NCBI GenBank assembly: GCA_051294905.1
Contig: CM119372.1
Coordinates: 10,788,001-10,852,000 of the forward strand
Length of the DNA: 64,000 bases
Source of the DNA: Botryllus schlosseri
Lineage: Eukaryota
Direction of reading: 5' to 3'
Below, piece by piece: positions 461 to 59,027 of the stretch; the stretch's first letter is position 1; each line of letters opens with the position of its first letter. Made by a program: the position numbers and the translations under genes. The notes under the pieces were generated by a model. It worked only from the letters and a program-made list of their open reading frames with translations, ran no database searches and was not told where the DNA came from.

Positions 461-3400
461 GTAAGAACTCTAAAGTGATTTCACAAAGAATTATAATAAG
501 ATACTAATTCACTTCCATGGATTGTGACACCTGCCACTATTTCATTCAAGAATTCAGGTATCAATCACCGTGCTTATCACGACTGGTATATGGAACTGTA
601 AGAGCTCTTACGAGGACGAGTGAATGCGCCTTTAGGTGGTGCGAATCATACGGCATTTGCTCAAACTGAGCAATGAGCATATTGCTATATTTGCAATTTT
701 TATTACAACATTTTTATCAGTTAATCGACATCGGAGTCTAATATGTTGCACATGTGGCATACACATGGCATGTACATTGTGTCCCAGCCCGATGGTTGAT
801 TGCTGCATAATTTGCTCCCGATTTTATCTCGAAATCTGTTGATAGTGAGAACCGGCCGAACCCGTAATATTCGGCTCGACATCCCCCTCTGGTCTCTGGA
901 ATGACTAGAGACAGAATTTCTGTATCTACCCCTATAGAGGGTGCAATGCAGACTTTTGAAATAGTAGTTTTTTTTCATTCGCGCCATTCACACGCATCTT
1001 GTTTTAAGTGACGAAAAAGAGCTCGAAAAAGACATCGATTTCCGGAAAAGACTAAAACAAGTGTAAGCCACAGTATACCGACTCTTGACTGAAACTAGGC
1101 TAAACCATTGCTGCTAACGAAAACAAATACATCATTTGTATTCAGTGAAAAGTATAACAAGGAAGAGGAATCCGGCGAATGGGACGTTTGGTCTCTCCTG
1201 AAAAATGCCTCCTCGCGAGATTACGAAGCCATCGCTTTCAAATTCGGCATATCGGATATCAGGGCGATGCTGCGTCGACTTTCCAATACAAAGAAAAGGG
1301 AAAATCAAAAGACATCGTGTGAGTGAATCATCGGACAAAATGAAATTTCTCTTTACCACCATTCCGCGGATGAAATATCTGATGTCATAGAGATAGACGT
1401 ACAAGATTGCGGATGTAATATAATGAAGGCCTGACATGACCATTTCAATACTCGAATCAGTATCGAGTGCCAATTTTGATGATTCGAGTAATGAGGAATA
1501 CACAAATTGTCGAATCGATTCCAAATAGAATCCTCCAGGTATTCTATTTTGCGCAGCCCTAAATGTAGTACCCGCATTTCGACGAAATTTCATCAGTCCC
1601 AGTTAACAAAAAAATGTCATACCTGCAACATGCTCCTTCAAGCATCGACTGTATTCGTATTGTATTGTATACAGCGTTCTCGAAAAAGATGCCGGAAACG
1701 ATATCGTGCACTCTCGGCGACAAGGTAGTCCTAGAGGCCGAGGTGGCGAACGAGCAAATGACCGTTAAATGGCAAAAGAACGGCCAGAGCATCGACGCCA
1801 GCAAGCACTACCAAATCATGACGAAAGGTATCATTTCCGAAAGACGATTAAAACAGTGGTTCCCAAACTTTTTCAACTCACCGCCCCTTTATCAAACTCG
1901 AAATATATTTATTTTCCCCACAGAGAGCTAGAGGCAATCAGTAAAGAAGTACTTCTACTTTTCCATCGTAATTAAGTAGGTTTTATGTAGGCTACTCGTT
2001 TCATTTAATCAAGTAGTTTTGTTAGTATACTACTTCTACTTGAACAGTTTCTAACGGCAAAACCAACTAACACTGTCAAACGAAAAGTAGGTTTGGATGC
2101 ACTTCAACAACGCGTTGCTATGAAGTTGAGTAATTCATGAATTAGTTCAATTGATATAATGTGAAGTAAATTTTGCCGATATCACCCTTTTCGCTTCTCA
2201 TGGGCGCGGATGAGTCAAGCATTGAGTCGTTTTCCAATTAACATCCATCGATTAATATAAATTTAATCAGAAAGAATCCAAACAGTTAATTGCATAAAAT
2301 AATATGAACGTTCTATATGACTTTCAACCCTTGACTCTCAAAATCACCCCCATGGGCAATATTGCCCACTTTTGGAACCACCGGACTAGAACATGCAACA
2401 CGCGGATGAATCAATCCGCACCTTCTTGACGCTCAGAAAATAAGCGGACTCTAGTAATCGACAAAGCCATTTTGGAAGACGACGCTACCTATTCGTGCCT
2501 CGTTGGCAAGGACAGCTCGGCGTGCGAGCTATTTGTGAGAGGTAAACCTGGGCATTCTCTTACGGGAGTTTGGTTCTGATCTGCAGCGTTTTAAGAACAT
2601 CCCGTCACGATCACCAAAGGGCTGGAGGACGTACAAGTGGTCGAAGGGCAAGACGCTGAATTCAAGTGCGAGGTATACGGGTCGATCGTTTGTCTAGACT
2701 CTAGAGCTAGCGATGGGCAAAACAAGCCAGTTTCAGCTTCACTTACGGCTGTTGACATTGTTAGCGTGGAAAGTGTGTTATCACTTCGAAGAGACTTGGC
2801 GCGTATTTTTTACTTCACTGGCTGACATCATAACACAACAGTATATTCTATATGTTGGAAACTACGTTTTTTCTCTTCGATTCTAGCTTTCCAACGAAAA
2901 CGGCAGATTCAAGATACTAAAAGACGGGTCTCAGATCGAACAAGGCGACAAATACAACATCAAAAAGGAAGGCGCACACGTCACGTTCAACGTCAAAAAA
3001 GTAAATTGCGTTTGACGGTCACAAACTCTACGTACGATATCCGCCCGAACTCATTAAGATTTCAACGGACGACGAAGGCTTCTATCAAGTCGTGACGAAC
3101 GGGGCGCAGTCCTGCGCTGAAATCGTGGTGCAAGAAACTCCCAGCTTCACACAAAGCTTTTCCGATTTGAAGGTGCGGTACTGGGTGACCTTACGATCCG
3201 TAAACGACCGAAGAACGCATGACCTTCGATCTATCTCGCAGGTCAACTTCAAAGACACTGCGGAATTCGCGTGCGAGGTTGCCGATGAAAGTATTCAAGG
3301 TCACTGGCTCAAAAATGGTAAACCTGTCGTGGCCACTGAGAAGATAAAGATTACGCAGGTAAAATATCACGCGGTTATTGTACGACCATGACAAAATATC

Positions 3401-6400
3401 GGCAGGATCGAAAAGACCGGGTGTCTTACCTATAAATAAATACACCATCATCGACAGCGGACATATGATCGAGTTCGAGAAAATATTTCGATATGTATGA
3501 AAAAGATATTACGAAATTGAATTAAGGCAGCTACTCAACTCTTGATCAGGCTTATATTTGACATAGAGGACGTACGGTGGCGGGATGACCCTGCCTATAA
3601 ATAAGGCTTGGTGAGTATGGTATCAGTGTTAATAGAATTAAAACAGCTAATCAAATAAGTCATTGAAATGATTGAAAATTCAGAGGAAAATATGTACAAA
3701 TACCGAGAGACGACACAGATATATCTGTGTCTTCACGATGACAATATAATGTCCAAGTTGTAAAACATGGGTGTATTATATCTAACATCTTTGGTCATCC
3801 CACTGGTCGGCACCCATTCGAATCGTGGAAGATAAAATTCCGATGTTGATATTCCAGGATAAAAAGGAGCGAAAATTGATCATCACACAAGTCAACGACG
3901 GCGATCAAGGCGAATATACATTCGCGGCGGAAGGCGCCGTCACGTGTCGTATCACTGCCGCTTTGGAATTAACGGGCGGTCACGTGGTGATAGAGAAGAA
4001 AAAAGGTAACCTCAATCCCCTGGTACCATTGGCTAATTACAAAAGAATACATGCGCGCGCCTGATAATCGGTGTTTGATTATATATGGATGATAAATGAT
4101 ATTCGCTGAGGGAGTCGTATGCTTGTGGGTTGCTCGAATTGACTCTGGGTGGATACAAAGCAATTATATTTGTCGTGATGAATTATATATTCCATCGCGA
4201 CAATCCATCTTGCGACTTGAAATTTGCTTGATTTATCCGCAAACTATAGGGATTTCGAAACAAAGCTTTCATTCTAATGGCGGCGGAGACTCAGAATCCA
4301 CTGGTACATGTAGTCGGTAGTGACCATTTCCCCAGTTTTCGGTTTCTTAGTCACATTATTCGATTGTGATATATACCGGTAACTATATGCGGATGTCGAT
4401 GCAGGATTGCCATGCAACATTGTTAGGAATACTGCCGTGTAGGCTCGCAAAATCCAGTACTGGTCATTGTAATCATCGTTGGTGCTCAAATAGAAGTTGA
4501 ACTAACATTGTAAATTTCTACTCAAGTACAAGTGGAAGTTGCGATTTCTATAGGTAATTACGAAAGTGGTTATTTGAGGTCTAGTTTTAGGGCATAGAAA
4601 ACTGTTACGAAGAAGTGGAAGTAGTCTAAAATCATAATCTAATCAGAAAATATTGGAAGTAAGCAAAACCTGCTTGACTACTCCAAAAAAGTAACAGTAT
4701 AATTTCTTCCTGACCTTCTCTGCCGCGATCCCCCATCGGCGGAATATCTTATAAACCAGCTAGATACGTACGACTCAAATCTAATGCCAATCTCATTTAG
4801 AGAAGTCACCCCCAAAGATATTTTTGGATAACTCCATGCAAGATCGGGCGATTGTTGTGCGCGCTGGAAATAAGGTCAAGTTGGCCATACCAATCTCTGG
4901 ACAACCCGCGCCCGTGGTGGAATGGAAAAAGGGGCCGAAGGTGAGCTCTTTAGACGTAGAAGCATATAGTACAGTGGATGCTCACCGAGATCAACCTCCA
5001 TTCTTCCACCGCATATGTTAACGATGCTATTCAGGTGATAAGCGAGGAATCTTCGGGCAGGGTTAAGATCGTGAACTCGCTAGACGCGAATATAACAACC
5101 CTCGTGATTGATAAAGCAAAAAGAAGCGACTCCGCCGATTACGTTTTAAACTTAACCAGCGAGGAAGGCGTCGTAACGGCGACTTTCGTCGTGAAAGTAA
5201 TAGGTGGGGAATGGATGAGGAATGTTCGCAATGTGGCGCAAGCGAGTCACAAATATCACGACGGCCATCGACAATGCATGTTGCGCACCTCAATCACGCT
5301 GATTTTGCATTGAATGCTGGGTAACACCGCTACTGCATTGCAGCTAATACGTTTCCTTGAAACAAATTTTGCATTCGTATATCGCTTTGCAATACCGAAT
5401 CACCCACCAAAGTCACTGTTCACGAAATTCCATTAGCGTTATCAAGTAGGCCTAAGGGTTGTGATTGACAGGCTACAAATCCACTACGACATAGTTTCAG
5501 GATTGTGACTTTGGTTCGTGATTCGGTTCCAACAATTGTGAACCGAACGTGGTAAATACCGAAGTACTTCTACTTTTCAAATAGAGTATTCAAGTTAGTT
5601 TTGACCAACTGCCTTGTGTCTACCTACTCAAGTGATTACGTTTTTTTCTGTTCCAATTCTTAACAGTTTTTAGGCAAAACTATATTCTTTTGGACTATGG
5701 ATTTTGTACAGTAAAAAGTAGTTTGGGGATATCATTCCATAACGAGTGAAATTGTGATGACGAATGGGCGACATAGCCCCTGTTTCGCGGTTAATGAATA
5801 TATTTTCGAAAATCGAGCCGATTTGTAGTGGCATGTGTAATTTTACATTAGTCGCTAGTAAACGCACCGTGCAATATCGAAAGTAGCCACCTTCGGTCGG
5901 CTGCGACAAGTACGCGACGTATCAACCAAATCAATTAAAATTTTGATACTACTTACTTCAGTACTATTCGCATGTTCATTGTTCATTTGCCCCTTCAAGT
6001 TGAAGCAGTTTTGACATTTATTAAAAATCGCTGCTTCTTCGTGCAATTGAGTAGAAATTTACTCTGGTAGTTCTGTGTACTTGTAATAAACATGAGTGCT
6101 TTTGCCAGCTTTGGTCGTCTAAGTAGATGTAGAAGTAACTTCGTGAATTTCTACACTAATACAATAAGTTGCGATTTATGCGTTACTAAAAAGTATGTAT
6201 TCTAGACCTAGTTTTGCCTAAACTGAAGACTGCTAAGTATAAGTATAAGTGATATAAAATCACATCCAGTCGAGTACGTTGCGTAAGTAGGCAGAACCTT
6301 CTTGACTACTCCAAAAATTAGAAGTACTTCGTTACACACCATCTCTGAAAACCATGTCATTACGTAGCCACGCGTACGCAAATATATACTTCCCTAATCC

Positions 6401-9400
6401 ACCAAAAGACTAATGTGTCACGGCATGACATGCGAAACTCGCACGCAAACTTGTTCGACATAAAACATACAAAAATCGTTTCCGGCGCATTATCGCGAAG
6501 ATAACAACTTTAGATGCCTGACAGAATCCATCTGATAAATCAATAGATACGGTAGCCGTGCCTCTCGCGGCTTCGTACAATCGTGTAACGAAGCTGCAGC
6601 AAGGAATGCGATCCGCGAACGATTTTGTGCATGCGCTCTTGCAGGATAAATCCGAAGTGATCGAGGCTACCGGCAAGAGAGTATGGACGAACACGAGCAC
6701 CGAGCACAACAAAACGCACTTAGAAATATCGTCTTGTAAGCGCTCGGACAGCGCACTCTACGTCTGCACGCTCACTTGGGACAAATCGGGAACCGAGGGC
6801 GCGGATTCTGAGTATATCCGCCGGCATGACTTCGAATTTCACTTGAGAGTTGTTGGTGAGAACTGCGTGCTTTGAGATGTGTTCGAATATTGAACAGCGC
6901 GTACGTGGTCATATGACTTGAATATGGAACCTGTAGGAGTAGAAGTAGAAGAGCTGGAAGTAGAAGTGCTGGAAGTAGTTTAAAATCATACCCACTTGAG
7001 TAAGTAGTGCGTGTAGCCAAAACGTACTTGAGTACTCCGAAAGCGAATTGGGTTGCTCTTAAACCAGCGATGGTTTCACGACATTTGAGCATGCCTTTAC
7101 AGCCATTTCCCTAACTCTAACCACAACCTTATCCCTAATCGAATCCTATCCCAATCCCAACCCTACTTTTAGCGCACTTTATCATGTCACACATCCATTT
7201 GACCAAGGACCCACCGGCTTAGCTAACACACAAACGGTGTTTATCCCTATAGTATCAATTGATCAGTGGACAGGTCTGACCATAGGCGTGTGTGAAAATT
7301 TAGGAGCGCCAAATTTACGAACAGTATCGAATATCGGATATGTTGTGATGTAACCGCTGCAAATTACGTTACTGTGCCAAAAATGAAATTATTGGCCGGA
7401 CTAGTGTCCTTTGTGCCGTTATTAGTCATTTATATTGTCCGCGTTCTTGATTACTTTGCTGTGCACAGAATATTCATGCTTATTCTACTGCCAGTGTTGC
7501 TACTAGCGACCGAGGCGGCGCTATACGTTGAAATTGTAAATTGGCCTTTCGCTCTTTCGAATCTGTAATTTGCTAGATTCTAGAATCTAGTTCTAGAGCA
7601 TGTGGAGTATCTTATCTATGAACGTGTATTTTGGTACAAATATGGCCCATGGTTCATGTGCGATCTCCGAATTCGCGTTGTGTTGTCACAACAAACTCGT
7701 AATACGGCGCGGAACCGCTGCATATTGCTTGGCTTGCAAACGGGATAGCGTTGACGAGTTTGCATTACGTCACCGAATTTCCGCCGCCCCGAAAGGGGTT
7801 CTTGCAGCAATGGAACAGTGATATGCGCGAATGCATCAATCAGCGGTTACACGCTTTTCCACCCCGCGCAGTGAATGTTGACCCCGGCCGTATATTCGAT
7901 CATGATTGATGCGCGTATTTCCGCGTCTGAGGGGAAATCCCAGATAGTCTTCAGTTGCACGGGGTTATCAAACGCAACCTTTATTCGTCGAAGCAAATTT
8001 AGTGTACCAAGCAATGCAGCCGCCTGTCAGTGACCCCTGGCGATTTAAGACTGCCCGTAAATTGTCCGTACGGCGCGGTGGTCAGTAACGGGGTACTTCT
8101 ACTTTTTTCGAAGTAGATTAAGCCTATACTTGCACTATACTTACTCAGGTGATTATGTTTGTACACAACCTCATTCTACGTAACAATGTTTTAGACAAAA
8201 CTACTTTTATTTACACGTTGGCTTTTGTAAAGTAGAAAGTACTATTGGAATATGTTTGCATTACTTTCATGAGTAAAATTGTCATAATAACAGAATAAAA
8301 TGTTCCTTGTATCACGGTACCTGAAATATATTTTTGAAAATTGCACCAATTTGTAGTGTCCTCAGTCATTTGGCGTCAGTCGCGAATATGCCTAAACGAT
8401 TTTGAAAGTAGCCACCATAATCTGCTAAAATTCTGCGACGCCAGGACCAAATATTTTTTAGACTAAATAAGCTACTTCAGCACTTTTGGACCTTAATTTT
8501 CTGCTTCCACTTGGAGTAGTTTTGACATGTTTTGGAGATTCTACTTCTAATTGAGTACCAACATTGATTACTTTGATCACATGTGCTGTGTAGGGGGCAT
8601 AATCCATTACAATCGTCGCTCTGAAGTCGTTTAACTCCTCAAGCTGGACGTTGCACAATGCACATGATCCCTTGAACAGCAAGTTCTCGCGCCCTGATTA
8701 CGTGTGATCAAGGTCAATGGGTCGAGCGGCACTTAATAGCGCACACTGATCGCGCTCAATGGAATATATGATCCAATAAGCGCTAATAGCCAAATGAAAG
8801 CGTTGTGCGTTAGCACAGTAATTCACACTGACGTGACGACTGTTATGCGCGGGATAGTTTGACCCGCCACGCAAGAACAATCGCGTCGACCTGATAAAAG
8901 CACATCAATGACACCGCGTTTCCTGTCCAGCAAACACGCAACACTTATCAATCGAGTATAGAGCGAGCTTCTCAAAAATTTGACATTCTCATCCATGTGC
9001 CTACCGCACGACGACTGTTTACAGTATCAACACGAGCATGACACATTTGTTATGTCACAAAAACTGAAGTTTCAATGCCGAACAGGCGTTCTTATTGAGC
9101 CAGCGACGCAGGTGAGCTGGTCGGCTGATAAATGGTGGCATCAAACAGATCGCTATCATCGGTTTTGTTGTTGTATTTCGTCTAATTCGTAAATACGAAT
9201 GCAAGTCGATGGTCACAGATGTTCCGGGATCTCCGCTGACACCTAACGTATCGAATGTCACGGCGGAAACGTGCTCGCTGGACTGGCAAGAGCCTGCAGA
9301 CGACGGAGGATATCCGATCGAAGGTGAGAATGCTGTTGATGCTAAATTTGCAAGCTCCCAATAACTACGGCTGCTCAAAACCAAGTACCCGGGTGATTAA

Positions 9401-12400
9401 ATTCTGAGTCGACTATCCCATATTATGACATCTAACCAGAGGTGACGAATTACTCGTACTTTTCGCAGTACTCAAGTAGGTTTATGCTTACCTGCACTAC
9501 TTACTCCAGTGGTTATGGATTTAGACCACTTCTACTTGTATATCACAGGTTTTAGGGCAAAACTACGCCTGGAATAGCTTACTTGGAAATCAATACTTCT
9601 ACTTGTACTTGAGGAGAAATATGCCACGTTATACTTCAACTTGAGTAGGAAAGACGGTTACTTTGACCACCTCTGGCCATAACAGTATTTAATATTCCGA
9701 ATGTTGGAATATGTATGATTCTTTCTGCACAGGGAAATTGTTGCCAATTACATTCCCTCCAAAAAATGTCCATATTTCTGGACTAAGACTATATGCCGCA
9801 GCGCTTTGTGACCATTTCTCGACCAGTACTTGCCAGAAATGCCGTTCCATGAATAATAGTAGCTTTGTACGACAACTCTTACGATGCTGAGGTAGGCAAA
9901 CTGAGGTTTTGTGACTACAACGCTAGATATGAAGCATTGGAACTATATTTTCATTGAAAAAATCTTACCGGTCGACGTGGTCGTGCAATAGCACGGTATA
10001 TACAGAACTATTGTTGAAGTTGTCTTAATATCCCACGCGTGATACCGTGAAATTCCGTGATTATCAAATGCGCATATCCAGCATACCTTTTCCTTACGGT
10101 AAGCCTTACGAAGGAGGGGAAGATTGATAGATAGGAGATTACAACCGTATTGACGCAATACAGTCGAAAATTCAATGTGATATCATCCGGCCGACCTCTA
10201 ATGCTTGAATACATCAACGCTTGATTAACGATTAAATCAAAATATTGTTTAAAAGCACTTTGTTGTGGCAATTCTTACATGCGAAGCAGGGTGATAAAAC
10301 AAGTGTCTACTCTGCATTATGTCTCGTAATATCGATCGATAAGGATAAGCGTATCTGTGTCGCAAGTGAGTGGCCAACTCCAAATAAGCGTATCGACGTA
10401 TTCCTGACTTCACACGAACGAGGCAAGTAATGCCTCGTATGGCGAGTATCCTGTTTAGATTGCGTTCATCTCGTGAAGATGACATGTGATAATGTACAAT
10501 TCCTTTCATCGCTTGATATAAGGTAGAGGAAACACATGACGAAAACTAATTGGCGCGTTGCAAATCATTGCCATATCCTTTGCATCTCAACGTTCTCACG
10601 GCCTATCGGTCGAACTTTGAGTCCAATAAATCTAAAAGAATGCTATTAACACGACAACGGCTAGAACCGAATGAGCAACTGGGTGGGCCGTATTTTATAT
10701 ACGACAGTTGTCGACATCCATTGTGTTGTCCATCGAACTCAATAACTTCCGCCTAAGGTTTCTGTGATATCCTGGTTGAATTGGGCCCATAAATATCTGC
10801 CGCGTCAATGCCGCGAATAACGAACTTGAACTTGTGCCATTTCCTTGATAAATTCCGGCAGAAGCGAGAAGTACAATTGATACTCAAAGGTGGTCACTGC
10901 TGGTCAGTGAATAACCACTTCTACTTTTTCGGAAACCTCGAAAAGGTTTTACCTTTACTTTCACCACTTACTCTACGTTAGTAGACCATACATGACTACT
11001 CGCACTTCTGCGTGACCAGTTATTCTGGCAAACCATTAAATTTTAACGCTGTGGATTTTGAAATGCAGAATATAGTTTTGGTGTAGGTTTGCATCATTTT
11101 CATGAGTGAAGTTGTCATAAAACCGAATCTTAGTAGCCCAGTATCACGGTAAATAATATATACGAAAGATGACACCTATATTCGTAGTACCGCGATACCG
11201 CAAATATACTTTTTGAAACAGCTTGCTCGATTAGTTTATACTCATTTCGTTTTCTAATTACACATGAAGTATAGTGTTGGAAAATCCTACTTTCACTGGT
11301 AATTTAGTAGAGACTCACGGCGTTACTTCTATTTCTACCGGAGTAACAACGATGACAGCGTCGACAAGCGCTAATTAATACCGGATTTCCCCACATTTCA
11401 GGATATGTCATCGAGAGGAAGAAAACGCAATCCCAGCGCTGGATACGGCTCAACGCGGAGCCTCTAGACTGCACCGAGTACGAGGCACGCCGGATGATCG
11501 ACGGAATCGAATACCAAGTGCGCGTGCGAGCGGTCAGCGAAGTCGGCGTCAGCGAACCGAGCGACACTAGCAAGCCCTTCACGCCGTTGGGTGGGTTGAA
11601 CTTTAATCTCGTTTTGAGATTGTCGATAAGATGTCGCGACCGCTCGAGGTGTCATGTCGTAAATAACATCCGCTACCTATTAACCGACAAACATTCGAGA
11701 ATAAAAGTGATTTCGTCACATTACCCGAGGATGAGAAACCTTAATCGTGGTCGCAGATCAGTAGGAGATAAGGAATCGCTTACGTCACCACGGTGATTAA
11801 AAAGTGTAGACAAGATCTCATTTGGTAATGGCGGCGTCGCCTCATCAAACTGCGGACGAAGTGCAAAGCTGGGAATGCTTTAATAGATCAATTACGCGAA
11901 ATGCCACAGTTTGAGGTTCAAAATATCACTTGCGTATGCCACCGATGATTATCGCCGCGCGGCGTGCGGGATAATCAAGGACTGATTCTAAATGACTGTC
12001 GAATCGATCTTTATCTGAGATATGCGATTTTTGTGAAAGTGTAGGCGTGAGCGTTTCGTCTCAACTTCCTGAATATCATGACTTTTCGTGAAAATGACAC
12101 GCACAAGTCATCATTCAAATATTTCACTGATGACGATGGAAAACTACCTTGGTCATAAAATCGTGAAATGGCATAGTCGAATAGATACAGCGCTGGTCAA
12201 AGTAGACAGCGCTTCTGCTAGACTAGAGTGAATGTAAAAGAAACGCTGTGAATTACTACTTTATTACAAGTCATTACTTCAAGGGAAGTGGAAAATGAAA
12301 GATCTGAAAACTACCCAATGAAATAGTTCCAAAAGGTCGATTTGGTCGCGGGTTGCGTGTGCTTTGCAAATTTCTAGATTGCAAAACGTATCTTCGCGAC

Positions 12401-53648: not shown

Positions 53649-56600
53649 TCAGAGTCGAGATTGAGATCCCCCAGCTACAACAATTGTTTCGCCACTGATG
53701 AATGAGGCCTCGTGTGATGACAGGAAAGAAACAATGCCGGCGCACTCTTCCGGCTCTCCAGGTCGATTCATCGGGATACCGTCTGTCGCTGTCTTCAGTG
53801 CAGCTGGCGAACTTCTCAGAGCCTCACTGAACCTTGTCTTAATGAGGCCCGGAGCCACTGCATTTACCCTGATGTTCGATGGAGCAAGTTCAGTTGAGAG
53901 TGCCTTCGTCATTCCGAGCAGAGCTGTTTTGCTAACAGAGTATGCCCCCAACACCGAGCTCGGGGAATATCCAGCAATCGAAGTTACCATGGTAATCGAA
54001 CCTTGTCCTCGCTCCTCCAAGTATGGCACGACCTCCTTGATCAGCATGAAAGCGGCTTTCACGTTGATTTCCATGATTTTATCGAATGCCCTTTCGGGCG
54101 TGTGGATGAATGGTCCGAAATACGGGTTGACTGCCGCGTTCGAAACGAGGATGTCCACGCCACCGAATTCCGAGACAGCCTGTTATGAAAATAATCGAAT
54201 GCCGTCGCCATTTCTTGTAGTTGCAGGTTGTTCCTTGACTTATCGAATTTAGCGTTGAATGTAGTTTTGCAGTTAAAACAAAAATCAATTCAAAACAAAC
54301 ACGTCTAACACGGCCCCAATTGTTTAAAACAGGGGTCGCCAACTCCAAACGGGTCGCGGGCCACTTTTCAAATTTCGTAGAGGTTGTTGTTATTGTTGTT
54401 TGTGATATTTATGGTGTTTGTCGACTACGGTGGTCATTTACACCAGGTCAATTCTCTTCCTTTTTTATTCCGTAGCTGCCGACTTGTAGCACGGCCCACT
54501 TCCAGGCTTTTATAAGACACCGCTTACATTACAGGGATGAGATGGCAGGAGAAGCCTAGGAATTCTGGAGTCGACCTAGATCGGATTCGAGCCCGCAACC
54601 CATTGGTGTTGCAGCTGTGGATTATACCACTCCGCTATCTCGCCACATTTCGTAGAGGTCGCGGGCCGCAAGAATTCAATATCGAGACAAAATAGACGGC
54701 GCAGTTTCGCAACAACGCTTTAGAACTTCACATCAGTACAAAGTTGTGCTCTTTAACATGGAAGACGGCCATAGTTACAGCAAAAGAAGTATTATATAAA
54801 AGAAATACAAATACGACAATAATGTATATATGAGAACCTTGATTTTATTTTGAACTATGATCTGCGCACGATACCTAACAACGCTGTCCAGCTACCAAGG
54901 GATATTGAGGCGTTATTAAAGGGTGATCTCATGGGGATGCCCTAAGCCGTTTTCGAAGCGTCTCGGTCTTGGCAGTGTCTGGGCCATTGCACGTCAAGGC
55001 AATATGTGCGCAGTCACATCAACTGATTCTCTCTCGATGGAATGCTGTTGTTATCGCCGAAGCCGATTCAGATGGTGAGGAGTAGTGATGCTGGACCCAA
55101 GAAAATAGCATATTTTGAAACAACGATAACATCAATAACAATATTTTGAAACTGAAATCAATGTCAGCATTGCAAAACGCGTTCTTACGAAATCTCAAAT
55201 CTGACATGTGGGCTGCAAATTATAACCTCGCGGGCCCCTGGTTTGAAACACGTTATTTTTAGCCATGCAGTGTGTGCAACAGTTTAGGGTAAGTGGGATC
55301 ATATCTATCGATTGATACAAAGTGTTTTAAAACACTTATTTTAAATGCAATGTATGGATTCATAATTTTGTGAAAATTTTATGGTATGCAAAGTCATTTA
55401 TTCATTGCTTGGTATATATTAGCGTGTTAGTCATGGTGCTCCGACTTCTATGCGCAGGGCTGTTCAAAAATAACTTTTTTATCCAGATTCCAGCCATTCA
55501 CTGATTAAATTGTCAGGTTACCCTAAAAAACGCTGCACACCAAATTTGGTTCGATTCTAACAAGTATAGGACTCCGCAGATCCAATTACAATTTTTAATT
55601 TATTATGGAAAATTGAAAAAAACAATTTCCAAATTTTTTTGCCAACCCCATGAAATTGTTGAGCTGTCTTCAAAGACGTTGCAAAACAAATTTGAGTCAA
55701 TTCCGACCAATAGAAGCGGAGTTATGTGAATTTTTTCGATGATAATCCTCGGATTATCCTTGATCAATGGATAATCCGCGATTTATCAACGAAAAACTCA
55801 CATAACTCCGCTTCTACTGGTCGGAATTGACTCAAATTTGTTTTCCAACGTCTTTGAAGACAGCTCAGCAATTTCATGGGGTTGGCAGAAAAATTTGGAA
55901 ATTTTATTTTTCAATTTTCCATAATAAATTAAAAATTTTAATTGGATCTGCGGAGTCCTATACTTGTTAGAATCGAACCAAATTTGGTGTGCAGCGTTTT
56001 TTAGGGTAACCTGACAATTTAATCAGTGAATGGCTGGAATCCGGGTAAAAAAGTTATTTTTGAACAGCCCAATGCGCAATGCTTATACAATACACCGAGC
56101 CTGTCGACGGGATTATTGATTATATGGGCCCACAGCCCGGTTTGTTTCAATTACCATTTAATACCGGATTCACGACGGCGACATTTGTGGAGGTGTGAAA
56201 CATGAGTAAGTGCTTCACTTCCAGATGCTCTGCAGGCCAATGAATGATTTCGACTCATGATAACATGGAAAGAAATTGAAGATGCGGTGGGACTGCGTAA
56301 TGAGCAGGCCTGATCTCTATAATGTCGTGCGGCACGCTAGCATGCTTCAGAAGATAGCTCCGTTCAATACGAGTCATGATTAAACAATATGTTTCGAAAC
56401 ACCAATGCGATGGTTATTGTTCACTTAGGAGAGGGGGAACGCCATGATATACAACAAACCTTCGCCACCAATGCCCGACGATGGTCGGCGTTTCCGACAT
56501 GGCACACAACTCCGCAGACTGATAAATCTTCATTTTTCAGGTTTTCTACGGCCCTGTCGACGTTTATCTGCTTTCTACTACTGATAACAACTTTCGCTCC

Positions 56601-56687
56601 ATCCTGTGCCAGTTTGCGCGCGATAGCATAGCCTATTCCTTCCGTAGACGCAGTGACAATCGCTACCTTGCCATCTAACTTTCCCAT
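53649..56687 (-). CDS. DHRS4: Dehydrogenase/reductase SDR family member 4-like, 252 aa; coding exons 56687-56460 and 54179-53649
   Basis: [13 protein letters not shown] cofactor motif, [16 protein letters not shown] catalytic Yxxx[15 protein letters not shown]-terminal SRL (PTS1). Splice AAG|gtttgt ... ataacag|GCT, phase 0. Confidence 0.95.
54381..54646 (-). mobile_element. tRNA-derived SINE, family 2, in the DHRS4 intron
   Basis: Reverse complement GGCGAGATAGCGGAGTGG...GGGCTCGAATCC with a CAA/TAA-rich tail; a 3' fragment also at about 53215-53310. Confidence 0.7.
55457..56070. mobile_element. Foldback-type MITE (about 290-bp inverted arms) in the DHRS4 intron
   Basis: gggctgttcaaaaataact ... 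agttatttttgaacagccc; near-perfect self-complementarity; flanks TATGCGCA/AATGCGCA. Confidence 0.88.
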
Positions 56688-59027
56688 TCTTGATGGTCGA
56701 CATGAAATGAAGAGATTATGGTAGCCGTTCCAGTAATAGCGAGTAGCGGACGAGACAACTGCTTCATGTTAATCATTAACCGGTAACAACGCACCAAGAG
56801 TTCTGTACTCTTCAAATTAGCAGCGAATGAATTGTGTATGCGAACGTCAATGTCATTGCAACCACGAAGAAACGCGGGGTTTAGTAGTGTCAATTAACAT
56901 AATGCAGTCAGCTTTCTCAAACACCCATGAAACCGCATCGCGTGACTATGAACAATCGCCCGTTTCCAGTCTTCCTGGAAAAGGGTCCGGATGTCAATTC
57001 TGGACCACGAAACGGCACTATGTGCTCTAACGAGGAGAGTGAAATATTGGTGACTATTGACCAGTCGCTTAGAGTAGATACCTGTTCTTTGATATCTTTA
57101 ATTCGGATTTAGTCGAGCTGCCAATTTGTACAGTTGACCAGCAATACGCGTCGCCCCTTCTTGGCAAATATGTGACAATAGTCATCTTACATCTGGGATG
57201 TTCATTACTGACAATTTAGTTCACACGCAAAGCACATAGGGAAGAAACTATAAAAAGAGCAATTAACTTTAAAGCGAAAAGGAATCAATGATGAAACTAA
57301 TTCTTTTCGATTCTCAAGGCGAACCAACGTGAGCGAAACTTTCGGTTGAAAAATAGATTTGTTAAGTGCGTATAAAATGCCTTTTGTATCAGAGAATTTC
57401 AAGGATAGGTTCCGGTGACGTGGAAAACGGGTAAACGATAGCAAAGTTGGGTGAGGGACACAAAACATCTGCATCGCATTCTGAGCAATTGCGAATCTTC
57501 CCACTATATAATCTTCCATGTTGTTATTGTTGTTATTGCGGCTGTTATTGTTACGACATTATGATGTTTCAAGTGTCTAGTTAAAGCGCGGCTCGCGTTT
57601 TCTGTATATTATCAACTACTCACGTCGCTACACTACACTACACTACTACATTAGCCTAGATTGGTAAATTAATATTGATATCCACGTAAGAGTGGTGATG
57701 TCATATGTCGATCATCACAAGGTGCGATTTCATTAGGCCGAAAGCAATGCAATTGCTCGCTCTCGACGGCTCAGCACTCCAAAATAAGCAGTTAACGCAA
57801 TGACCTTTTTGGTATGCACTGGAACGTTTTCACTTTCCAGTTTTGCACACATTTTGAATGAAGTGTGAATTATATTATGCACAATAACACATTGCTCCAT
57901 AAGCAAGACTATTCTAATAGTTCCGCGCAGGGACTCTGTGCGCCTTCTGACGCATTCAGTGACATATTGGGTTGTCGGTTTCATTTAAACGGCGTTTGGT
58001 ACTCATAGAGTTCACTACGTTCGTTAACAGGATTTATAAGTCGACAAAACTCTCAATTACCAATCGAAGGCAACGATATTTATTACGGATTTTGACGTAC
58101 GCCGCTGCAGGTTTTTGGAGAATTGTATGCTTCTCTTCGAAGATGTATTTCAAACTTGGAAGATACAGGCGTCATCTCTTCGACAAGACGATTTCGTTGG
58201 TACCGTGTTAAACCCTTAATAGCACTAAATGGCATAGTTATCAAGAAATTACAAACGATCTGAATAAACGTCGCCCGAAGGCTTACTTTACTTTCGTGCA
58301 CACGGCAAACGCAAACGATAATCTTATAAAGGTAACCTCCAACTAGGCTATAGCCCTAAAAGCCCTGACCAATTACTTGACATTACGTCACCGAAGTGGT
58401 ATAAATTACAGCAGCTCATAATGACTTTTGAGATATGGCATAACAATAAATGAATAGCATTTAGTGTTTAATTACACAGTATTAACCCTCGGCGATTGGC
58501 AGTCAGAGATCTATCGAGAAGATGATTACATTAGTAAGCCATGAACCAGCCTTCACTCAGTTCCTTCAACGAGGGTTCTCGAACTAATCTCATGATGTAA
58601 TAAAAAAGCAGATGTCACCACGGTAACGGACGCGTTCCCGCAAAACATGAGCATTGAGCATGACGTTAAGTCGCAGGTACATTTGACATCAAATCAATGT
58701 CAAAGCTCAATTTCAATTCGACATAATCAAACCATATTCAAGGGGTGGCAAGTTTACTACGCCTTAGTTAGTTCATATGGTCGATGCATATGCCGGGCTA
58801 TATGTTCCAGAAGACAACAAATTAAAAACATAATTATGGTACTGTTGTGTTTCTGCAATATGCATACATATTGACATTGTCACCCTTGTCTGATCACCGC
58901 CATTGTAATTACAAGCACGACAGGTAAATTGTTGGCCATTTTTCAATAGCAAAGCCATGTCATTATGATGTTCACGTCAAAACTACAACTCAAGTCAAGA
59001 ATAGCTAATAATATACCGGGTATCCAT

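What the first reader, a model, noticed from the sequence alone, without database searches (positions are those of the whole stretch)
5035..6855. Tandem mutually exclusive exons encode two different C-terminal halves of MyBP-C Ig domain C5
Seen in sequence: after the shared C5 first-half exon (4801-4940, ends phase 0) come two exons, A (5035-5203, 169 nt) and B (6645-6855, 211 nt). Both are phase 0 to 1, have GT-AG sites, and are followed by the phase-1 FN3 C6 exon. Including both, or skipping both, shifts the frame. Each encodes the D-E-F-G strands with a shared KRSDSAxY motif but different synonymous codons, which suggests an old duplication. B is 14 aa longer, mostly a charged F-G loop insert (WDKSGTEGADSEYIRRH), and carries two Cys absent from A. 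Established: vertebrate C5 differs between paralogous genes (the cardiac form has a large CD-loop insert) and lies in the hinge/interaction region. Inference: a single-gene animal swaps half of an Ig fold by splicing to make tissue- or stage-specific C5 variants. I know of no description of this for MyBP-C.
Basis: partly seen in the sequence, partly recalled or inferred. Interest (0 to 1): 0.88.

Follow-up and report, generated by a model that had tools for sequence, protein, structure and literature searches.

The report
Either-or exons in MyBP-C domain C5
A sea-squirt-type muscle gene (myosin-binding protein C) builds the second half of one of its Ig domains from either of two old, conserved alternative exons, a splice switch not described before for this heart- and muscle-regulating protein.

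Summary
Exons A (5035-5203, 169 nt) and B (6645-6855, 211 nt) follow the shared exon 4801-4940. Both have AG/GT sites, both run phase 0 to 1, and they are homologous (47% over 38 aa).

Assembled RNA contigs show each exon spliced in alone at the predicted junctions. Run X25 has 4940>6645 and 6855>9219 (exon B, depth 43). Run X1 has 4940>5035 and 5203>9219 (exon A). Including both or neither gives a stop within 2 or 6 codons.

The gene is a MyBP-C orthologue. It has the M-motif tri-helix bundle, then Ig x4, FN3, FN3, Ig, FN3, Ig, and it matches human cMyBP-C collinearly. The shared exon matches C5 residues 643-686.

The A/B pair sits in the same order, phase and splice pattern in three other species' genomic contigs, and exon B alone in three more. 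A groups with A and B with B, and third codon positions are near saturation. The duplication is therefore old and both copies are under selection.

Exon B adds a strongly conserved acidic F-G loop and an invariant F-strand Cys.

The kind is known (FGFR IIIb/IIIc-type half-Ig swap), but I found no description for MyBP-C. Tissue or stage specificity and single-gene status remain untested. The scan noted other either-or exon candidates in this genome, none here.

The parts
1183..1281 (+). MyBP-C M-motif tri-helix bundle (context: family marker upstream of C2)
   Evidence: Pfam THB PF18362 scores 53 bits against a cutoff of 25. The best PDB matches are MyBP-C M-domain structures 9pfe, 2lhu and 5k6p.
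3858..4005 (+). Second-half exon of Ig domain C4, ends in phase 1
   Evidence: Sequence read. The X25 contig's loose end before 4799 continues into this exon. It is 62-65% identical to the collinear exon in L001, L003 and L004.
4801..4940 (+). Shared first-half exon of Ig domain C5 (strands A-B-C), phase 1 to 0
   Evidence: Matches I-set positions 8-37. Its best single-domain PDB match is human cMyBP-C residues 643-686, the start of C5, at 30.7 bits. It is joined to A in X1 and to B in X25. It is 73-75% identical in L001 and L003.
5035..5203 (+). Exon A: canonical I-set second half of C5 (strands D-E-F-G, tight F-G turn), 169 nt, phase 0 to 1
   Evidence: Matches I-set positions 43-90. X1 contigs join 4940>5035 and 5203>9219. 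Orthologues are L001 6877-7048, L002 330-504 and L003 4547-4718.
6645..6855 (+). Exon B: alternative second half of C5 with an F-strand Cys and a conserved acidic F-G loop insert, 211 nt, phase 0 to 1
   Evidence: A 2262-nt X25 contig at depth 43 joins 4940>6645 and 6855>9219. It matches V-set positions 54-97 and I-set positions 49-78. Orthologues are P0001, P0002, P0005, P0006, P0016, L001 7225-7438, L002 811-1024, L003 5786-5999 and L005.
9219..9323 (+). First exon of FN3 domain C6, entered in phase 1 from either A or B
   Evidence: Joints, sequence, translation. It is 51-57% identical in L001-L004.
11402..11590 (+). Second exon of FN3 domain C6 (3' end approximate)
   Evidence: The loose end behind 9324 in X25 matches its start. 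Matches fn3 positions 28-81. It is 71-75% identical in L001 and L003.

Best explanation
This is a genuine, evolutionarily old pair of mutually exclusive exons in the orthologue of myosin-binding protein C.

Gene structure (shown): the shared exon encodes strands A-B-C of Ig domain C5. The splicing machinery then takes either exon A or exon B for strands D-E-F-G and goes on to the FN3 domain C6.

Exclusivity (shown at the level of the reading frame): both exons are 1 mod 3 in length, so taking both or neither puts a stop codon almost at once. That such mRNAs are removed by nonsense-mediated decay is inferred.

Choice of exon (partly shown, partly inferred): one sample's assembly holds only the B form and another's only the A form. 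That the difference is muscle type or life stage is inferred.

Protein consequences:
- Exon A gives a standard sarcomeric I-set domain with a two-residue F-G turn.
- Exon B gives the same fold with an invariant F-strand Cys and Trp and a roughly 12-residue acidic F-G loop (W-D-K..E-G-x-D-S-E-Y-I-x-R). This loop is the best conserved part of the exon.
- By Ig topology the F-G loop lies at the N-terminal pole of C5, next to the C4-C5 junction.
- In the human cardiac filament, C5 is the first domain held on the filament and C2-C4 are mobile.

Inference: exon B most likely changes the C4-C5 hinge, or adds a docking surface there. This would give the animal two functional MyBP-C forms from one gene, where vertebrates use paralogues that differ in C5.
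For: - Splicing: one search gives exact GT..AG joints. X25 has 4940>6645 and 6855>9219 in one 2262-nt contig at depth 43, with zero depth over exon A. X1 has 4940>5035 and 5203>9219, with zero depth over exon B.
- Expression breadth: one search finds exon B words held in full by four runs of study P2, and at 0.47-0.79 by eight runs of two other studies.
- Frame: one search shows the stops for A+B and for skipping both.
- Homology: one search shows A and B are homologous.
- Gene identity: establish MyBP-C and the C5 position.
- Conservation: searches show the same order (C4b, shared exon, A, B, FN3a, FN3b) in L001 and L003/L004, and A, B, FN3a in the short contig L002. All eight exons have AG..GT and length 1 mod 3. 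A-A identity is 46-75%, B-B 44-77% and A-B 25-38%.
- Selection: L001 against L002, gives codon positions 1 and 2 differing at 14-17% and position 3 at 53-58% for both exons. The intron between the exons shows no similarity.
- Loop conservation: one search finds 21 invariant columns in B, concentrated in the F strand and the F-G insert.
- Half-domain models: searches give an F-G connection of 12 residues in B against 2 in A (pLDDT about 69).
- Vertebrate context: bioRxiv 10.1101/2023.04.11.536274 reports strong density for C5-C10 and mobile C2-C4. PMC10937550 says human C5 is encoded by exons 21-23, with the cardiac insert in exon 22.
Against: - Tissue or stage of the two runs is unknown.
- Contigs drop rare variants, so low-level co-expression in one sample is not excluded.
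- The X1 joint 4940>5035 rests on only 25 nt on its shorter side.
- The two raw-read RNA runs tried (X8, X9) had no coverage of the gene, so there are no junction counts.
- No full C5 or C4-C5 model was made, so the hinge or docking role of the B loop is inference from Ig topology and from isolated half-domain models of moderate confidence.
- No conserved intronic regulatory element was found.
- The taxon of the window and of the metagenomic contigs was not determined here.
Confidence: 0.85

Rival explanations
1. Exon A is the only functional exon. Exon B is a decaying duplicate, or a 'poison' exon whose inclusion merely lowers expression.
For: A looks like the canonical I-set half and matches titin-type domains. 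B is the odd one out: it has a V-set-like E-F motif and a long insert.
Against: - B alone keeps the frame into FN3.
- B is the only form in a depth-43 contig of run X25.
- B keeps an open frame, AG..GT sites and 1 mod 3 length in five further species.
- B shows a third-position excess of change, typical of purifying selection.
- B's insert is its most conserved part.
Confidence: 0.03
2. Both isoforms are real, but the choice is not tissue- or stage-regulated. They are co-expressed in the same muscle cells at some ratio, or differ between individuals or alleles. The two runs differ only through assembly dropout.
For: Contigs show presence, not absence (notes). X1 has low depth (4-9). Metadata of the runs are hidden. 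The species is highly polymorphic, with 3% differences in X1 contigs.
Against: - X25 has depth 43 on B and nothing on A.
- Its unitig runs across 4940 without a branch.
- Long-term conservation of both exons in several species argues for separate roles.
- Ascidians are reported to use splice isoforms of other muscle genes in a muscle-type-specific way (PMC6589888).
Confidence: 0.1
3. The tandem pair is an assembly artefact, such as two haplotypes or a collapsed or expanded repeat, rather than two exons of one gene.
For: The genome is polymorphic.
Against: - A and B are only 38% identical in protein and differ in length by 42 nt.
- The same A-then-B order is found in independent contigs of three other species.
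- RNA contigs join each exon to the same flanking exons.
Confidence: 0.01

Closest known systems
FGFR1-3 IIIb/IIIc mutually exclusive exons (own knowledge)
   Same: Two tandem homologous exons encode alternative C-terminal halves of a single Ig domain after a shared first-half exon. One and only one is used, and the swap changes the binding properties of the domain.
   Different: FGFR is an extracellular receptor domain that binds ligand, with well-studied epithelial/mesenchymal regulation. Here the domain is an intracellular sarcomeric I-set domain, the main change is an F-G loop insert, and the regulators and tissues are unknown.
Dscam1 exon 4 and exon 6 clusters (own knowledge)
   Same: Mutually exclusive exons that each encode half of an Ig domain.
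   Different: Dscam has dozens of variants, they encode N-terminal halves, and the choice is made by docking/selector RNA pairing. Here there are two variants encoding the C-terminal half, and no docking/selector pairing was found. Exclusivity is secured by reading frame.
Vertebrate MyBP-C paralogues (MYBPC1/2/3) differing in C5; cardiac 28-aa C-D loop insert encoded by MYBPC3 exon 22 (PMC10937550)
   Same: Same protein family and same domain. An intron falls after the C strand in both. Muscle-type-specific forms differ by a loop insert in C5.
   Different: Vertebrates achieve this with separate genes, not splicing. Their insert is in the C-D loop (C-terminal pole). The insert here is in the F-G loop (N-terminal pole, by Ig topology) and has an unrelated sequence.
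Alternative splicing of vertebrate MYBPC1 (own knowledge; papers listed)
   Same: The MyBP-C family is known to be diversified by splicing.
   Different: As far as I know, the reported MYBPC1 events are cassette exons in the N-terminal region, M-motif, C7 and C-terminus. They are not an either-or swap of half of C5. I did not read the papers listed in detail.
Ascidian troponin I tissue-specific splicing (MacLean, Meedel and Hastings 1997, cited in PMC6589888)
   Same: The logic is the same. A tunicate single gene plus splicing yields muscle-type isoforms where vertebrates use paralogous genes.
   Different: It is a different gene and a different kind of event. It does not remodel a folded domain.

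Membership tests
[quoted passage not shown] | M-motif with C-terminal tri-helix bundle between C1 and C2 | tested here: met
   Pfam THB scores 53 bits against a cutoff of 25 at window 1183-1281. The top PDB matches are MyBP-C M-domains.
[quoted passage not shown] | Domain order after the M-motif: Ig(C2)-Ig(C3)-Ig(C4)-Ig(C5)-FN3(C6)-FN3(C7)-Ig(C8)-FN3(C9)-Ig(C10) | tested here: met
   Exon-by-exon Pfam scans give four Ig domains, then FN3, FN3, Ig, FN3, Ig along 1677-28480.
[quoted passage not shown] | Domains match the positionally equivalent MyBP-C domains best | tested here: met
   The C8 piece matches cMyBP-C 997-1055 as top hit. The C10 piece matches 1166-1228 as top hit. For the shared exon, the cMyBP-C C5 stretch 643-686 (30.7 bits) is its best single-domain match, although titin ranks first by whole-sequence E-value.
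[quoted passage not shown] | N-terminal C0/C1 and Pro/Ala linker | not testable with these tools
   The 5' part of the gene lies upstream of the window start.
Mutually exclusive exon (MXE) pair by tandem exon duplication | Adjacent exons that are homologous, with the same phases and canonical splice sites | tested here: met
   A and B are 47% identical over 38 aa, E = 1e-7. Both have AG..GT and run phase 0 to 1.
Mutually exclusive exon (MXE) pair by tandem exon duplication | Transcripts contain one exon or the other | tested here: met
   The X25 contig has B without A. The X1 contigs have A without B. All junctions are exact.
Mutually exclusive exon (MXE) pair by tandem exon duplication | Transcripts with both or neither are absent or unproductive | tested here: inconclusive
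   Both combinations give immediate stops, so they are unproductive. Their absence could not be measured because no raw reads covered the gene (X8 and X9).
Mutually exclusive exon (MXE) pair by tandem exon duplication | Both exons conserved in other species | tested here: met
   L001, L002 and L003/L004 carry both exons in the same order and phase. P0001, P0002 and L005 carry B.
Tissue- or stage-regulated splice switch | Isoform ratio differs reproducibly between defined tissues or stages | not testable with these tools
   Only one read-laying run was allowed, run metadata are coded and the raw-read runs had no coverage. The sole indication is that X25 holds only B and X1 only A.

The most novel reading that the evidence does not exclude
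The exon-B F-G loop (W-D-K..E-G-x-D-S-E-Y-I-x-R, with an invariant F-strand Cys) is a conserved, splice-controlled docking or hinge module at the C4-C5 junction. It would set how the mobile N-terminal half of MyBP-C leaves the thick filament in one muscle type, for example heart against larval tail. On this reading tunicates and vertebrates independently made C5 the muscle-type-specific domain of MyBP-C: one lineage by an either-or exon with an F-G insert, the other by gene duplication with a C-D insert.
Probability: 0.25. Interest if true: 0.7.

Novelty: new member of a known kind. Interest (0 to 1): 0.52.

Why it matters
MyBP-C is a main regulator of striated-muscle contraction, and its cardiac paralogue is among the most frequently mutated genes in hypertrophic cardiomyopathy. 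The role of its central domains C3-C6 is still unclear (PMC10937550).

A natural switch that leaves the protein unchanged except for half of C5 singles this domain out as a site of functional tuning. The switch is old and under selection. In particular it points to the C5 pole facing C4.

It offers two matched isoforms for structural, binding and knockout tests in a simple chordate.

It also adds a clear case to the rule that splicing in one lineage and gene duplication in another can solve the same problem.

Tried and rejected
- Raw-read RNA runs X8 and X9 gave no reads on the gene. There are therefore no junction counts and no test of co-expression.
- A Foldseek search of the isolated exon-B half-domain model against the PDB gave only chance matches, all with E above 0.8. 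A half sandwich folded alone is not a meaningful query.
- I did not predict the full C5 or C4-C5 structures. A spliced protein has no reference in these tools and I did not type long sequences.
- Full-length annotated isoforms could not be retrieved. The 50%-identity library would hide a B isoform behind an A representative. Whether databases already list both isoforms is therefore untested.
- Docking/selector RNA pairing: the inverted repeats in the introns are copies of short dispersed repeats, not exon-proximal conserved sites (and loose ends).
- Steric exclusion is rejected. The A-B intron is 176-1441 nt in the four species.
- Conserved intronic regulators: the 300 nt downstream of exon B do not align between species. 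A GCATG lies 130-240 nt downstream of B in all four species, but this is a post hoc, weak lead.
- A third copy of the exon was sought by tblastn over the whole window and none was found.
- Earlier notes of this scan had nothing at this place.
Full report
**Observation**

- The shared exon is 4801-4940 (140 nt). It starts with two bases that complete a codon begun in the exon ending at 4005, and it ends in phase 0.
- Exon A is 5035-5203 (169 nt). Exon B is 6645-6855 (211 nt).
- Each is preceded by AG and followed by GT. Each ends with one extra base, which is completed by the AT that opens the exon at 9219.
- A and B share K-R-S-D-S-A-x-Y written with different codons.
- B is 14 residues longer and has two Cys, whereas A has none.
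- BLASTP of A against B gives 47% identity over 38 residues, E = 1e-7 for the single comparison.
- Joining the shared exon to A and then B gives a stop two codons into B. Joining it directly to 9219 gives a stop after six codons. A alone or B alone reads through into FN3.

**Transcripts**

I laid two contig runs and two raw-read runs on 4700-9400.
- Run X25 (study P2) has a 2262-nt contig at depth 43. It covers 4855-4938, jumps to 6643-6854, jumps to 9218-9324 and goes on into the next exon. The skips are 1704 and 2363 nt with GT..AG ends. Depth over exon A in X25 is zero.
- Run X1 (study P1) has contigs joining 4938 to 5033 (skip 94; 25 nt on the shorter side) and 5201 to 9217 (skip 4015; 45 nt on the shorter side). 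Depth over exon B in X1 is zero.
- All four predicted junctions therefore exist in RNA, and each sample's assembly holds only one form.
- The two raw-read runs (X8, X9) had no coverage of the gene and test nothing.
- Exon B's 31-mers are held in full by four runs of P2 and at 0.47-0.79 by eight runs of two further studies.
- Contigs cannot show absence of a minor form, and the run metadata are coded. Tissue or stage specificity is therefore an inference.

**What gene and which domain**

- A tri-helix bundle of the MyBP-C M-motif lies at 1183-1281. Pfam THB scores 53 bits against a cutoff of 25, and the best PDB matches are MyBP-C M-domain entries.
- Exon-wise Pfam scans downstream give four Ig domains, then FN3, FN3, Ig, FN3, Ig, out to about 28.5 kb. 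This is the C2-C10 order of MyBP-C.
- The pieces for C8 and C10 have human cardiac MyBP-C as their top PDB hit, at residues 997-1055 and 1166-1228.
- For the shared exon, titin ranks first by whole-sequence E-value, but its best single-domain match is cardiac MyBP-C residues 643-686, the start of C5, at 30.7 bits.
- The alternative exons therefore encode the second half of C5.
- Exon A matches I-set positions 43-90. Exon B matches V-set positions 54-97 and I-set positions 49-78, and then departs because of its insert.
- In human MYBPC3, C5 is encoded by exons 21-23, with the cardiac C-D insert roughly equal to exon 22 (PMC10937550). An intron after the C strand is thus shared with vertebrates.

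**Conservation**

- A full phmmer scan of 1.84 billion representative proteins with exon B found four clear relatives. All are short ORFs called on genomic or metagenomic contigs (P0001 67%, P0002 52%, P0005 53%, P0006 48% identity).
- A profile search added P0016. One metagenome scan added L003 and L004.
- In L001 (ENA assembly) and L003/L004 (JGI metagenomes), tblastn finds the same order: C4 second half, shared C5 exon, A, B, FN3 first exon, FN3 second exon. L002 (JGI) is a short contig and holds A, B and the first FN3 exon.
- I placed the exon ends by hand. All eight exons have AG..GT. A is 169-175 nt and B is 211-214 nt, always 1 mod 3.
- L005, a TARA Oceans scaffold, carries a more divergent B exon of 208 nt with the same ends and phase and a shorter insert.
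- Identity is 46-75% among A exons, 44-77% among B exons and 25-38% between A and B. The duplication is therefore older than these species.
- Between L001 and L002, codon positions 1 and 2 differ at 14-17% and position 3 at 53-58%, for both exons. The intron between them has no detectable similarity. Both exons are under purifying selection.
- In B the invariant columns cluster in the F strand and the insert: D-S..Y-x-C-x-L-x-W-D-K, then E-G-x-D-S-E-Y-I-x-R.
- No third copy exists in the window.

**How it most likely works**

Shown:
- The exon structure, the spliced forms and the frame rule.
- The age of the pair and the selection on both exons.

Inferred:
- Removal of A+B and skip mRNAs by nonsense-mediated decay.
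- A regulated choice between muscle types or life stages.

Steric exclusion is ruled out by intron lengths of 176-1441 nt. I found no docking/selector pairing: the intronic inverted repeats look like dispersed repeat copies (and loose ends).

At the protein level, isolated half-domain AlphaFold models (pLDDT about 69, so low weight) give four strands for each exon. The F-G connection is 2 residues in A and 12 in B.

By standard Ig topology (own knowledge) the F-G loop sits at the N-terminal pole of the domain, facing C4. In the human cardiac filament, C5-C10 are held on the backbone while C2-C4 are mobile (bioRxiv 10.1101/2023.04.11.536274).

I therefore think exon B changes the C4-C5 hinge or adds an acidic docking surface there. 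This step is untested.

**Comparison with what is known**

- The closest known kind is the FGFR IIIb/IIIc switch, in which two exons encode alternative second halves of one Ig domain. Dscam half-Ig exon clusters are a further relative (both from own knowledge).
- Within the family, vertebrate paralogues differ in C5 by a C-D loop insert (PMC10937550). Here the difference is made by splicing and lies in the F-G loop.
- Ascidians are reported to use splice isoforms of other muscle genes in a muscle-type-specific way (PMC6589888).
- I found no paper describing this event. The large review of tunicate muscle does not mention MyBP-C at all. Only two held papers pair the protein with ascidians. One reports the Ciona homologue as heart-specific among adult tissues (PMC8462739). 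The other places the origin of MYBPC genes at the tunicate-vertebrate node (PMC11203038).
- Whether gene annotations already list both isoforms could not be checked with these tools.

**Organism**

I did not determine the taxon. Other agents' notes on this genome call it a tunicate or ascidian. These are leads that I did not test. The presence of a MyBP-C orthologue only about 40-50% identical to the human protein fits that.

The scan's notes list other candidate either-or exons elsewhere in this genome, none at this place.

**Verdict**

The feature is real and well supported. It is a new member of a known kind. It is of moderate interest to muscle biology and to the study of splicing against gene duplication.

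Noticed in passing
window 53652-54182 and 56424-56768, minus strand: Two exons of a short-chain dehydrogenase/reductase gene (adh_short_C2 E = 9e-47; adh_short E = 2e-11). It is an unrelated neighbour downstream of the MyBP-C gene.
   Followed up: partly
window 5550-5577, 6314-6341, 8079-8107; 5620-5645, 6982-7007, 8138-8172: Short repeat copies lie in both orientations in the introns around exons A and B. RNA-run contigs enter them from elsewhere in the genome (loose ends at 6188). They look like a dispersed MITE-like family.
   Followed up: no
window about 7089; L001 about 7677; L002 about 1232 and 1247; L003 about 6131 and 6174: A GCATG (Rbfox-type motif) lies 130-240 nt downstream of exon B in all four species, although the introns do not align. 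This is a weak, post hoc lead to a splicing enhancer.
   Followed up: partly
window 5023-5034: The 12 bases before exon A's acceptor read in frame as D-A-I-Q. They align with the D-G-K-Q that opens exon B homologues. This may be a relic of an older acceptor position.
   Followed up: no
window about 4853: X25 unitigs break at 4852-4855 inside the shared exon. A 31-nt side contig is present, and depth is 111 upstream against 43 downstream. This is probably a polymorphism bubble and was not examined.
   Followed up: no
L005 (TARA Oceans metagenome scaffold), about 230-437: A divergent exon-B homologue with the same splice pattern and phase but a shorter F-G insert (W-D-K-G-A-D-S-E-Y-I-R-R). It comes from a plankton metagenome, which hints that the exon also exists in a pelagic relative.
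   Followed up: partly
window 5035-5203 and 8441-8992 in run X1: X1 contigs differ from the window at about 3% of bases and also cover intron pieces at low depth. This fits a highly polymorphic species and some unspliced RNA or DNA in that library.
   Followed up: no
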